Shown here: positions 5,259 to 9,191 of the stretch, piece by piece
How the letters are laid out: each line of letters starts with the position of its first letter
How positions within the stretch are numbered: the stretch's first letter is position 1
Position numbers and translations under genes: made by a program
Notes under the pieces: model-generated
The model's database searches: none
What the model saw: the letters and a program-made list of their open reading frames with translations, nothing else
Told to the model about the DNA's origin: nothing
Source of the DNA: Diplonema japonicum
Lineage: Eukaryota; Protista; Euglenozoa: Diplonemea
Assembly: GCA_964019335.1 (NCBI GenBank)
Contig: OZ025675.1
Location: 62,001-126,000 of the forward strand
Reading direction: 5' to 3'
Length of the DNA: 64,000 nucleotides

Positions 5259-5624
5259 TTGGTATACCCCTCCCGCCCTCCCTGTTTTGTTTACTTATTT
5301 GTCGGCATGAAAAGAAAAGTAGAAAGAAAGAAAGAAAAGAACCGGACTTAACGTTAGTTACAAAGAATAGAAAGTTTTTCTTTTTTCGTACACAGACAAC
5401 GCATCTAAAAGAAAAGAAAGAGAACAAAAAAAAAATATATGAGTTAAAGGAGGCCGGTGTTGGCGGCGCCCTGCACAAGAACTGTCTACTTGATTACAGG
5501 GGGCGCACCGCGGCCGAGTTGTAGCTTCTTCTGCGTTCCGCGTCGTGTCCTTAATGCGTGCGGTGTACAGCTCAACCCCAGCCGGGGCGTCCCGGGTAAC
5601 CAAGATTCTGCGCTCGTGCAGTTT

Positions 5625-5758
5625 GCTGCCTGTTCGTCACCCTGAGCATCTGCGTTACGTTCTTCCACTCGGGTGCTACCGGTGATGACCGACGAGGAGG
5701 TCAACAGCGAACAACACATCTGATGTTTTTCTTATATTTTCATGTTATCCCCACCACC
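5625..5758 (-). ncRNA. HDV-like (nested double pseudoknot) self-cleaving ribozyme
   Basis: P1 GGUGGUG(5758-5752)/CAUCACC(5687-5681). P2 GCUGUUG(5708-5702)/CAGGCAGC(5632-5625). P3 ACC/GGU closes L3 UCCUCGUC. P1.1 GG(5680-5679). P4 CACCC-GAG...CUC-A-GGGUG. J4/2 ACGAA with candidate catalytic C at 5636. Confidence 0.85.
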
Positions 5759-5820
5759 TTGGATCGAACCCACGACCATTGGATTAAAGGTCCAACGCTC
5801 TACCGCTGAGCTAGGTGGGC
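5749..5820 (-). tRNA. tRNA-Lys(UUU)-derived sequence (not a functional tRNA; A and B boxes intact)
   Basis: GCCCACC TA GCTC AGCGGTA GAGC G TTGGA CCTTTAA TCCAA TGGTC GTGGG TTCGATC. D arm and anticodon stem are intact with anticodon TTT, but position 33 is C and the 3' strand of the T stem is replaced by CAAGGT. Confidence 0.85.
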
Positions 5821-6574
5821 TCTTTTCTTTTAAAAAATAGCTTCGTTGAGATAGCGGAAAAAAAAACTCGACTGCGGGGTAACAACTATCTATTGTCACT
5901 GCAGTGCTACACGTAACTTCAGCACTACTGAATTTACAAAAAAAAAGAAGAACAAATCTTTTAAAAAAAAAAAGAAAAAAAAGGGAGAGCGGAGGATTTG
6001 CGAAAAGGTAACAAGGAGCAGTGGTCTCCACCAAAGGGCATCTGACCAACAGCATTAGAGATTGGTATCTAGCTTGCTAATTATTTTCTTTTTTCCTCCC
6101 CCCACCCTCCCTACTTCGGGGGAAAAGAAAATTAAAAAAGGGGGAGGTGGGGGAGTAAATCAGGCCCAACAACCTAACATGCGCTTAGAACGACGCATTA
6201 GAGTGACAGGGTGCTTTTCTACCGAAAAAGAAAGAAAGGTGACTATCCATGCCAATGACACTGACTCAAAGCGTGCTGCCCATCAAATAGTATCTCAGGA
6301 GAAGTGTAAAGCAAGGTTGACACCTTATTTCTTTGGCAAAAACAATAGCTAATATTGGGCTAATTTCTAGTAGGGGGTTAAAATTGTGCGCCTGACCAAC
6401 AGATACGAAGACGCGGTCTGGAAGTAGCACAGTGGTCGATACGGGAGGAATCTGGGAAGGCATCAAGTGCTACCAGAACACAAATCTGACCTCCCTATTT
6501 AGAAATCCCCCCAATATATAAGAGATAAAGGATTTAAAATAGAAACTCAAATGAAAATAGTTCATTTCAACCCA

Positions 6575-8719: not shown

Positions 8720-8855
8720 ATTACAGGGGGCGCAATTCGGCCGAGTTCTAGCTTCTTCTGCGTTCCGTGTCGCGTCCTTATGCGTGCGGTGTGCAACTCA
8801 ACCCTAGCCGGGGCGCCCCGGGTAACCAAGATTCTGCGCCCGTGCAGCTTGTGCA
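8720..8855 (-). mobile_element. Ribozyme-SINE internal fragment (body)
   Basis: Aligns to about 5492-5622 with scattered substitutions. Confidence 0.85.
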
Positions 8856-9029
8856 GTGAAAAGAAAAACAATAAAAACGGAGCGTACCACCAAAACGTGT
8901 TTGGTCACTAGAAAATATAAAGGAATATTATTCGTTTTACTACCAACAATGTCTTCTTTTCTCCGACTCTCCCTTCAAAAGGGCACAAAACGAGAGTTAC
9001 ATTATGACATGGCTCAGTACCATATTTAC

Positions 9030-9191
9030 CAGCGAGCTGTAGCTTAACCAAGATTCGGCGCTCGTGCAGTTTGCTGCCTGATCGTCACCCTGAGCATTTG
9101 CAATACGTTCTTCACCTGGGCGCTACCGGTGATGACCGACGAGGAAGTCACCAGCGAACATATTTCCATGTAAAGAAACTTCACGCTCACC
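9030..9191 (-). mobile_element. Ribozyme-SINE 5' fragment with degenerate HDV-like ribozyme, just downstream of the stop of gene 9233..11464
   Basis: Minus strand GGTGA(9191)...GCTGGTG ACT TCCTCGTC GGT CATCACC GG...CTCAGGGTGA CGAT CAGGCAGC. Confidence 0.8.

What the first reader, a model, noticed from the sequence alone, without database searches (positions are those of the whole stretch)
5430..5820. tRNA-Lys promoter head fused to an HDV-like ribozyme: candidate new self-cleaving SINE system
Seen: on the minus strand a tRNA-Lys(UUU)-derived sequence with intact A box (TAGCTCAGCGG) and B box (GGTTCGATCC) stops being tRNA right after the T loop. An HDV-like fold follows at once with every element in order: 7-bp P1, P2, P3 ACC/GGU, L3 UCCUCGUC, P1.1 GG, P4, J4/2 ACGAA. 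A structured body of about 190 nt and a T run come next. Established: L3 matches HDV genomic UCCUCG at the first six positions; HDV-like ribozymes define 5' ends of R2 and ingi/L1Tc-type retroelements and occur 3' of tRNAs in phage theta ribozymes. Inference: Pol III makes an RNA of about 385 nt that cuts off its own 62-nt tRNA-like leader at 5759/5758 and releases the mobile RNA. I do not know of a described element with this layout, but could not search.
Basis: partly seen in the sequence, partly recalled or inferred. Interest (0 to 1): 0.92.

Follow-up and report, generated by a model that had tools for sequence, protein, structure and literature searches.

The report
Ribozyme-headed SINE inside a tRNA gene
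A short mobile element that carries a probable HDV-like self-cleaving ribozyme at its front end has landed in, and cut short, an ordinary tRNA-Lys gene of a diplonemid protist; the tRNA piece is a one-off neighbour, not part of the element.

Summary
The sequence features are real. The proposed layout is not a family trait.

- **tRNA piece.** Window 5820-5761 (-) matches the first 60 nt of five intact tRNA-Lys(UUU) genes elsewhere in the genome. The last 12 nt are missing.
- **The repeat.** A 323-nt interspersed repeat (SINE-1) starts at 5758. The genome holds at least 634 copies with a near-intact ribozyme core. Only this copy has a tRNA B box upstream.
- **Ribozyme fold.** The first 134 nt fit every HDV-like helix: P1, P2, P3, L3 UCCUCGUC, P1.1, P4 and J4/2 ACGAA with C5636. 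The predicted cleavage site coincides with the 5' boundary of the repeat.
- **Related elements.** Two APE+RT LINE families share the SINE's last 16 nt. They and a second SINE family also begin at G1 of HDV-like folds, with different helix sequences and a conserved core.
- **T run.** It is target or terminator sequence, not part of the element. The element's own tail is (TA)n.
- **Orientation.** Copies are co-oriented with the polycistronic gene arrays.

This matches the known L1Tc/NARTc (Pr77) and R2 arrangement, here in a diplonemid, probably Diplonema japonicum. No cleavage was tested.

First readers noted ribozyme-headed SINEs and 5S-rRNA-ribozyme fusions elsewhere in this genome. I did not check those notes.

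The parts
5761..5820 (-). First 60 nt of a tRNA-Lys(UUU) gene, with A box and B box intact. The 3' 12 nt (T-stem 3' strand and acceptor 3' strand) are lost.
   Evidence: ARAGORN and Rfam tRNA calls. 100% identity over these 60 nt to intact tRNA-Lys genes at L032-L035 (one mismatch in L036), which continue CCACGGTGGGTG plus a T run.
5759..5760 (-). Two A residues between the tRNA part and G1 of the repeat. The second is the extra A seen before G1 in 25 of 30 copies.
   Evidence: Flank table, gap-to-G1 table.
5436..5758 (-). One 323-nt copy of a high-copy non-autonomous retroposon (SINE-1). Its sequence equals the consensus of its subfamily.
   Evidence: 40 scored copies at 98-100% identity, all starting at query position 68-73. 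634 genome matches to its 24-nt ribozyme core. T-rich TSDs of 7-14 nt in 26 of 31 copies, none for this copy. Subfamily comparison.
5625..5758 (-). Candidate HDV-like self-cleaving ribozyme. Helices: P1 5758-5752/5687-5681; J1/2 insert 5751-5709; P2 5708-5702/5632-5625; P3 5701-5699/5690-5688; L3 5698-5691; P1.1 C5697 C5696 with G5680 G5679; P4 5675-5671/5642-5638 with a distal extension; J4/2 5637-5633.
   Evidence: Pairing verified by script. Unique descriptor hit against 0 of 100 shuffles. Core ACCUCC..GU.GGU(N7)GG is invariant across four element families.
5636..5636 (-). Proposed catalytic cytosine in J4/2 (ACGAA), the counterpart of HDV C75.
   Evidence: Position follows from the fold. 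The Rfam HDV consensus has GGCuAAuGGGAC at the same place. Catalysis was not tested.
5436..5451 (-). 3' terminal 16 nt (TCCTTTAACTCATATA), shared with the 3' ends of LINE families E and F. This is the likely recognition tail for the partner reverse transcriptase.
   Evidence: BLAST and sequence reads at L053:6933-6912(-) and L060:7039-7018(-), about 35 nt after the LINE ORF stop. The LINE ORFs carry RVT_1 and Exo_endo_phos domains.
5426..5435 (-). T10 run just downstream of the element. It is target sequence, most likely the remains of the tRNA gene's own Pol III terminator.
   Evidence: Intact tRNA-Lys genes end in GTGC followed by T4-T7. In other copies the element ends CTCATA(TA)n and T-rich TSDs abut it.

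Best explanation
A resident tRNA-Lys(UUU) gene, one of six in the genome, was hit by a 323-nt non-autonomous non-LTR retroposon, here called SINE-1.

How the element works (shown or inferred as marked):
- It targets T-rich tracts. Integration most likely began in the tRNA gene's terminator T run (inferred).
- The 5' junction formed inside the T arm and deleted the last 12 nt of the tRNA and the upstream half of the target duplication (inferred).
- SINE-1 has no promoter of its own. Its copies lie in the sense orientation inside polycistronic Pol II units (shown).
- Its first 134 nt fold as an HDV-like ribozyme that would cut immediately 5' of G5758 and free the element's 5' end from the co-transcript (fold shown, cleavage inferred).
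- Its last 16 nt plus a (TA)n tail are shared with two APE+RT LINE families, which would reverse-transcribe it by target-primed reverse transcription (sharing shown, mechanism inferred).

This is the L1Tc/NARTc and R2 logic in a diplonemid. Boundaries, copy number, partner LINE, TSDs, orientation and fold compatibility are shown. Cleavage, the mobilising enzyme and the order of events at the tRNA gene are inferred.
For: tRNA gene and its uniqueness:
- The 60-nt identity to intact tRNA-Lys genes breaks exactly there.
- The locus has its own unique 5' flank, with the same GA at -2/-1 as four of the five intact loci.
- The tRNA-SINE junction is unique in the genome, against at least 634 core-bearing copies.

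Element boundaries and insertion:
- Copies start at G1, mostly preceded by 1-3 extra nt ending in A, and end CTCATA(TA)n.
- T-rich TSDs occur in 26 of 31 copies; the window copy has none.

Sense strand:
- The SINE's last 16 nt equal the 3' end of LINE families E and F, on the strand of their ORFs.

Ribozyme fold:
- All helices pair and the descriptor hit is unique against shuffles.
- LINE E (L059:4412), LINE F (L054:4682) and a second SINE (L032:1003) also begin at G1 of HDV-like folds.
- P1, P2 and P4 sequences differ between these elements while the P3/L3/P1.1 core is invariant.
- P4 of LINE E versus F shows one C-G to U-A double change and no disruptive change.
- The LINE ribozyme lies in the 5' UTR, because the transcript-derived ORF starts downstream of it.
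- The compact L032 fold hits Rfam RF00094 full length at 29.1 bits, E = 0.009.

Orientation:
- 24 of 26 informative loci are co-oriented with flanking ORFs.
- Among the first 100 listed core sites, each contig shows at most one switch from - to +.

Other:
- Relatives' contigs carry the repeat but not the tRNA or flanks.
- Known precedent: PMC3185411, PMC4035085, PMC3414825.
Against: - No biochemical or read-level evidence of cleavage. Only Logan contigs were available, and they cannot show RNA ends.
- No Rfam HDV-family hit on SINE-1 even at E <= 10. The 43-nt J1/2 insert is the likely reason.
- The nested MFE fold of the ribozyme region is no better than shuffles, z = 0.19.
- SINE-1 has G1-C at the base of P1 rather than the G1.U wobble of HDV. 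LINE E/F and SINE-2 do have the wobble.
- 25 of 30 copies carry an extra A before G1, often CA or CCA. A clean cut at G1 does not predict this.
- SINE-1 copies are 98-100% alike, so they give almost no covariation. The one apparent G-C/A-U switch in distal P4 (5658/5654) involves two CpG sites and a 2-bp stem, so it may be mutation bias.
- The SINE and LINE share only 16 nt.
Confidence: 0.75

Rival explanations
1. One reading: the tRNA-Lys head is the element's own Pol III promoter, and tRNA head + ribozyme + body is the unit of a new self-cleaving SINE family.
For: In this one copy the A and B boxes are intact. No run of four or more T occurs before the T10 that follows the element.
Against: None of the 39 other scored copies has the head. 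It is the only B-box-to-SINE junction in 62.5 Mb, against at least 634 copies. The head is 100% identical to the genome's functional tRNA-Lys genes, so it is not a diverged SINE head. Copies have no way to inherit a promoter that the ribozyme cuts off.
Confidence: 0.03
2. Chimeric retrocopy: the LINE reverse transcriptase reached the 5' end of a SINE-1 RNA, jumped to a tRNA-Lys fragment and copied it. The tRNA part would then come from RNA, not from a gene at this site (as in U6-L1-type chimeras).
For: Many copies carry 1-3 extra nt (A, CA, CCA) before G1, which suggests template jumping or non-templated addition. An ATTTTTT lies 11 nt upstream of tRNA +1 and could pair with the downstream T run as a TSD. 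First readers report 5S rRNA-ribozyme fusions elsewhere in this genome (I did not check them).
Against: The 60 nt are a perfect DNA-level copy. They cover positions 26, 37 and 58, which in many tRNAs (my background knowledge) carry modifications that stop RT or cause misreads. The 5' flank shows the GA at -2/-1 typical of the genuine loci. A jump to a tRNA would normally start at its 3' CCA end, and that part is missing here. This model also needs an 11-nt filler.
Confidence: 0.12
3. The HDV-like fold of SINE-1 is a chance or decayed resemblance and does not cleave. The sharp 5' end would come from transcription initiation or another processing step.
For: No Rfam hit. MFE is not better than shuffles. 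G1-C replaces G1.U. The extra A before G1 in most copies.
Against: The full set of helices and core nucleotides occurs once in the window and in none of 100 shuffles. Its G1 coincides with the repeat boundary. Three other element families in the genome show the same architecture at their 5' ends, with co-varying helices and an invariant core. One of them hits RF00094.
Confidence: 0.12

Closest known systems
L1Tc/NARTc and ingi/RIME of trypanosomatids: Pr77 hallmark with the L1TcRz HDV-like ribozyme (PMC3185411, PMC3383444, PMC4035085)
   Same: A euglenozoan host with polycistronic transcription. An APE+RT LINE and a short non-autonomous partner both begin with an HDV-like ribozyme that would release the RNA 5' end from co-transcripts. 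TSD-flanked dispersed copies.
   Different: Here the SINE and LINE ribozymes differ in sequence, sharing only the P3/L3/P1.1 core, whereas Pr77 is a common 77-nt hallmark. SINE-1 and the LINEs carry a 40-50-nt J1/2 insert. The tail is (TA)n in T-rich targets rather than poly(A). Only 16 nt of the 3' end are shared. No promoter function is known. The nearest named protein relatives of the LINE are from Diplonema, and no trypanosomatid protein was among the hits. Similarity to Pr77 itself was not tested.
R2 elements and their non-autonomous derivatives (SIDEs), with a 5' HDV-like ribozyme (PMC3414825)
   Same: Ribozyme-defined 5' end from a host co-transcript. A large J1/2 loop is tolerated (my recollection, not checked here). 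Non-autonomous copies keep the ribozyme and the 3' RT-binding end.
   Different: R2 is site-specific for 28S rDNA and uses a restriction-like endonuclease. These elements are dispersed in T tracts and the partner LINE has an APE-type endonuclease.
Classical tRNA-derived SINEs (internal Pol III A/B-box head retained in every copy)
   Same: This single locus looks like one: a tRNA head, a body, and a LINE-like 3' tail.
   Different: The head is absent from all other copies and is cut off by design in the proposed mechanism.
   Same: An HDV-like fold directly 3' of a tRNA-type sequence.
   Different: There the pairing is a conserved tRNA-processing arrangement. Here the adjacency is unique to one locus and destroys the tRNA. 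I did not check the literature on this.

Membership tests
HDV-like self-cleaving ribozymes | Nested double pseudoknot with P1, P2, P3, P1.1 and P4 in the canonical order | tested here: met
   All helices pair in SINE-1, and also in LINE E, LINE F and SINE-2. The descriptor hit is unique against 0 of 100 shuffles.
HDV-like self-cleaving ribozymes | Cytosine in J4/2 (C75 equivalent), with the L3 U...G and CC that pair with the GG of P1.1 | tested here: met
   J4/2 is ACGAA with C5636. L3 is UCCUCGUC. C5697 C5696 pair with G5680 G5679.
HDV-like self-cleaving ribozymes | G1.U wobble closing P1 at the cleavage site | tested here: not met
   SINE-1 has G1-C (5758/5681). LINE E/F and SINE-2 have G1.U. 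I did not establish how strictly the family requires this pair.
HDV-like self-cleaving ribozymes | Score at or above the gathering threshold of an Rfam HDV-type model | tested here: not met
   SINE-1: no hit at E <= 10. LINE E: none. SINE-2: RF00094 at 29.1 bits against a threshold of 50, E = 0.009, full-length alignment.
HDV-like self-cleaving ribozymes | Site-specific self-cleavage giving 5'-OH and 2',3'-cyclic phosphate ends | not testable with these tools
   Only contigs of public runs could be laid. No raw reads, and no bench.
tRNA-derived SINE | tRNA-related head with A and B boxes present in the family's copies | tested here: not met
   0 of 39 other scored copies. One B-box junction in the genome, this one, against at least 634 copies. 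No tRNA in 29 other SINE loci.
Ribozyme-terminated non-LTR retroposons (L1Tc/NARTc, R2/SIDE type) | The 5' end of genomic copies coincides with the ribozyme cleavage site | tested here: met
   All scored copies start at G1 within 1-5 nt. 25 of 30 have an extra A before G1.
Ribozyme-terminated non-LTR retroposons (L1Tc/NARTc, R2/SIDE type) | An autonomous RT-encoding partner that shares terminal sequence | tested here: met
   LINE families E and F (RVT_1 + Exo_endo_phos) end with the same 16 nt plus the same kind of tail. LINE E matches a transcriptome-derived protein (complete ORF) at 99% identity.
Ribozyme-terminated non-LTR retroposons (L1Tc/NARTc, R2/SIDE type) | Target-site duplications from target-primed reverse transcription | tested here: met
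   TSDs of at least 7 nt in 26 of 31 copies, for example ATTCTTT, TTTTATTT and TATTTCTTTT.
L1Tc/ingi clade specifically | The Pr77 sequence hallmark at the 5' end, and a poly(A) tail | tested here: inconclusive
   The tail is (TA)n, not poly(A). I held no Pr77 reference sequence, so I made no sequence comparison. The nearest protein relatives are diplonemid.

The most novel reading that the evidence does not exclude
By deleting the tRNA's 3' end and the upstream T run, the insertion created an accidental Pol III 'launch pad'. It consists of intact A and B boxes, then the ribozyme-headed SINE with no internal run of four or more T, then the tRNA gene's own terminator.

Pol III would make an RNA of about 385-395 nt. 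The ribozyme would cut off the 62-nt leader. The product would be a SINE RNA with an authentic 5' end and a U-rich 3' end, so this locus could be a privileged source copy.

First readers' unchecked notes report 5S rRNA genes fused just upstream of ribozyme-headed retroposons elsewhere in this genome. If real, such captures of Pol III genes, whose terminators are natural T-tract targets, recur.
Probability: 0.1. Interest if true: 0.7.

Novelty: new member of a known kind. Interest (0 to 1): 0.4.

Why it matters
It extends ribozyme-released LINE/SINE pairs from trypanosomatids to diplonemids, a very abundant group of marine protists whose mobile elements are barely described. The library I searched holds no paper on diplonemid retroposon ribozymes.

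It provides four co-varying HDV-like folds for bench testing. It also shows that the elements are inserted almost only in the sense orientation of the polycistronic units. That fits a life cycle which depends on host read-through transcription plus self-cleavage.

The tRNA fusion is a natural test case for whether a Pol III promoter can drive such an element. In itself it is a single disrupted tRNA gene.

Tried and rejected
1. **The + strand as the sense strand, with a poly(A) tail.** Long T runs (up to 37) abut the GGTGG end.
2. **Rfam.** No HDV-type hit on SINE-1 or LINE E, even at E <= 10.
3. **Thermodynamics.** Nested MFE folding does not single out the ribozyme or the body. A pseudoknot cannot be scored that way.
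4. **Covariation within SINE-1.** Copies are too alike. The 5658/5654 G-C/A-U switch (13 GC, 16 AU, 2 GU) is confounded by CpG decay.
5. **RNA ends from public runs.** All runs were Logan contigs. They show only that relatives and one marine metatranscriptome carry the repeat without the tRNA or flanks.
6. **Window copy as master.** It equals its subfamily consensus, which neither shows nor excludes this. Subfamily mates carry CA or CCA before G1, while this locus has CCAA, which argues weakly against.
7. **First descriptor hits in L051 and L052.** They lie inside an RNase H-like coding stretch (judged from my own reading of the sequence, no domain search was run), so I treated them as false positives.
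8. **An ATG inside J1/2 of the LINE.** I first took it for the start codon. The transcript-derived ORF starts downstream of the ribozyme.
10. **B-box patterns.** Two patterns required 11 nt of B box and so missed even the window copy.

Full report
**1. What is at 5430-5820**

On the minus strand, ARAGORN and Rfam call a tRNA-Lys(UUU). The genome (62.5 Mb, 132 contigs) holds five other tRNA-Lys(UUU) genes. The window copy is identical to them from +1 (5820) through ...GGTTCGATCC (5761), which is 60 nt. The intact genes then continue CCACGGTGGGTG and a T-run terminator. The window instead reads AA followed by GGTGGTGGGGATAAC.... So this is a genuine tRNA gene copy that has lost its last 12 nt. 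It is not a degenerate tRNA-like SINE head. Its 5' flank is unique, but it has the same GA at -2/-1 as four of the five intact loci.

**2. The sequence after the break is a high-copy repeat that never carries the tRNA**

- A genome search with 5430-5830 (-) gave 40 scored copies at 98-100% identity out of 1563 first-look candidates. All start at query position 68-73, which is window 5758 +/- a few nt. None includes the tRNA.
- The 24-nt ribozyme core, with at most one mismatch, occurs 634 times in the genome and 0 times in the reversed control.
- A pattern asking for a tRNA B box within 30 nt upstream of the repeat's start matches only the window copy. Two earlier patterns were too strict.
- No tRNA lies in 29 other repeat loci.
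- Contigs of public runs from related organisms, and from one marine metatranscriptome, cover 5436-5759 only. They do not cover the tRNA or the flanks.

**3. Anatomy and orientation of the repeat (SINE-1, 323 nt, 5758-5436)**

Copies begin at GGTGGTGGGG, mostly preceded by 1-3 extra nt ending in A. They end ...CCTTTAACTCATA(TA)n. T-rich target-site duplications of 7-14 nt flank 26 of 31 copies, for example ATTCTTT, TTTTATTT and TATTTCTTTT. The window copy has none.

I first suspected the opposite strand, with a poly(A) tail. That was wrong. Two LINE families carry RVT_1 and an APE-type endonuclease domain in ORFs of about 2000 aa. They end about 35 nt after their stop codon with the same 16 nt, TCCTTTAACTCATATA, followed by T-rich sequence, on the ORF strand (L053:6933-6912, L060:7039-7018).

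The T run is target sequence, and the element's own tail is (TA)n. LINE E matches a transcriptome-derived protein (complete ORF) at 99% identity.

**4. The HDV-like ribozyme**

| Element | Position (minus strand) |
|---|---|
| P1 | GGUGGUG 5758-5752 / CAUCACC 5687-5681 |
| P2 | GCUGUUG 5708-5702 / CAGGCAGC 5632-5625, one bulged G |
| P3 | ACC / GGU |
| L3 | UCCUCGUC |
| P1.1 | CC / GG |
| P4 | CACCC / GGGUG plus a distal extension |
| J4/2 | ACGAA with C5636 |
| J1/2 | 43-nt insert that forms its own hairpin |

A strict descriptor finds this site once in both strands of the window and in none of 100 dinucleotide shuffles. The descriptor was written after the fact.

Independent support comes from where the family starts. 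The predicted cut site is the 5' boundary of the repeat.

Further support comes from three other element families of this genome that also start at G1 of an HDV-like fold. These are LINE E (L059:4412), LINE F (L054:4682) and a second SINE with at least 218 first-look candidates (L032:1003).
- Their P1, P2 and P4 sequences all differ, yet they pair.
- The core ACCUCC..GU.GGU(N7)GG is invariant in a MAFFT alignment.
- Between LINE E and F, P4 shows one C-G to U-A double change, two one-sided changes and no disruption. The fold lies in the 5' UTR, not in the ORF.
- The compact SINE-2 fold has HDV numbering almost to the base. It hits Rfam RF00094 over its full length at 29.1 bits, E = 0.009, below the gathering score of 50.

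Weak points:
- There is no Rfam hit for SINE-1 or LINE E.
- Nested MFE gives z = 0.19.
- SINE-1 has G1-C instead of the G1.U wobble.
- Most copies have an extra A before G1, which a clean cut at G1 does not predict.
- Within SINE-1 the only apparent covariation (5658/5654) sits in two CpGs.
- Cleavage itself is untested.
- The 'structured body' is not supported, with z = -1.1.

**5. How it most likely works**

SINE-1 copies are co-oriented with flanking ORFs in 24 of 26 informative loci. Among the first 100 listed core sites, each contig shows at most one switch from - to +. That is the pattern expected of divergent polycistronic units.

The window itself is a one-strand array of adenylate cyclase and ABC transporter genes. 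The element has no promoter of its own, so it would be transcribed as part of the Pol II polycistron. The ribozyme would cut 5' of G1. The LINE E/F proteins would recognise the shared 3' end and integrate the RNA at T tracts by target-primed reverse transcription. This is the logic established for L1Tc/NARTc in Trypanosoma cruzi and for R2 (PMC3185411, PMC3383444, PMC4035085, PMC3414825).

**6. The tRNA fusion**

The most economical account has three steps.
- Integration started in the T-run terminator of the tRNA-Lys gene.
- The 5' junction formed 12 nt or more upstream, inside the T arm.
- The tRNA 3' end and the upstream TSD half were lost. This copy is one of 5 in 31 without a TSD.

A rival is a chimeric retrocopy, made when the RT jumped from the SINE RNA to a tRNA fragment. 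I rate it lower for three reasons:
- The 60 nt are a perfect DNA-level copy that includes positions which are modified in many tRNAs.
- The 5' flank looks like that of a real gene.
- A jump would normally start at the CCA end.

One reading is not excluded. The accident may have produced a working Pol III unit: A and B boxes, then the SINE with no internal run of four or more T, then the old terminator. The ribozyme would remove the leader from its transcript. The copy equals its subfamily consensus, which is compatible but not diagnostic. Its subfamily mates carry CA or CCA rather than CCAA before G1, which argues weakly against it as their source.

**7. Organism and novelty**

Four observations point to a diplonemid, probably Diplonema japonicum YPF1604. 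This is an inference.
- A spliced-leader gene at L054:4556-4594 has the diplonemid-type 5' part, ACCAACGATT... (compare 'Euglenozoa 14' in PMC3795323).
- The nearest named LINE relatives are from Diplonema papillatum.
- Marine runs hold the repeat.
- A 62.30-Mb assembly is reported for that strain (PMC13598402).

The D. papillatum genome paper lists LINE/SLACS/R2-like RT genes but no ribozymes. No paper in the library links diplonemids, retrotransposons and ribozymes in a relevant way. I therefore class this as a new member of a known kind.

**8. Earlier notes of this scan**

One note on this window says that other copies start at the cleavage site, lack the tRNA and are co-oriented with genes. 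I tested this and agree. Other first readers noted a ribozyme-headed SINE, and 5S rRNA genes fused just upstream of such ribozymes, elsewhere in the genome. I found only that the 5S genes are dispersed.

Noticed in passing
L059:4412-4524 (+) and L054:4682-4790 (+): Two APE+RT LINE families (ORFs of about 2000 aa, about 76% alike) begin with an HDV-like fold in their 5' UTR. It has G1.U, a 6-7-bp P1, a 40-45-nt J1/2 and J4/2 GCAAA. P4 shows a compensatory C-G to U-A change between the families.
   Followed up: partly
L032:1003-1079 (+): A second short repeat family (218 first-look candidates, copies 97-99% alike) starts with a compact 76-nt HDV-like fold. It hits Rfam RF00094 full length (29.1 bits, E = 0.009). 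This copy lies about 410 nt from another tRNA-Lys gene.
   Followed up: partly
G000 contigs C1-C24: Among the first 100 listed SINE-1 core sites, each contig shows at most one switch from minus to plus. This looks like a map of two divergent polycistronic units per chromosome.
   Followed up: partly
L053:6860-6935 (-), L060:7010-7040 (-), and SINE-1 3' ends: These LINEs and SINEs end in CTCATA(TA)n with no poly(A), and sit in T tracts. One LINE copy is followed by about 41 T. Both the tail type and the T-tract targeting are unusual for APE-type LINEs.
   Followed up: partly
SINE-1 5' junctions, e.g. L002-L030 at about 1500 or 1830: 25 of 30 copies have an A just before G1, often CA or CCA, lying between the TSD and the element. 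It is unexplained. It could be non-templated addition, a jump onto CCA ends, or RNA 5' ends 1-3 nt upstream of the predicted cut.
   Followed up: partly
L054:4556-4594 (+): A spliced-leader RNA gene of diplonemid type (...CAGTTTCTGTACTTTATTG|GTAC) lies 88 nt upstream of the 5' end of a LINE F copy, behind a run of about 41 A.
   Followed up: no
window 9160-9045, 8851-8720, 36215-36126, 61880-61824, 1125-1063 (all -): Diverged fragments of the same repeat family (77-92% identity), all on the gene strand. The 8720-9160 pair looks like an older, rearranged, longer variant whose P1 5' strand is degenerate.
   Followed up: no
G000 C52, C61, C51, C13, C18: Several other RT families (open frames 1429-1480 aa) lie in clusters spaced about 5-8 kb apart on a few contigs, which suggests arrays or nested insertion zones. 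Their ends were not examined.
   Followed up: no
window 3087-40525 (-): A tandem array of ORFs of about 700-980 aa. All three that were scanned carry an adenylate/guanylate cyclase domain. They are followed by an ABCA-type transporter and an ankyrin protein, all on one strand.
   Followed up: no
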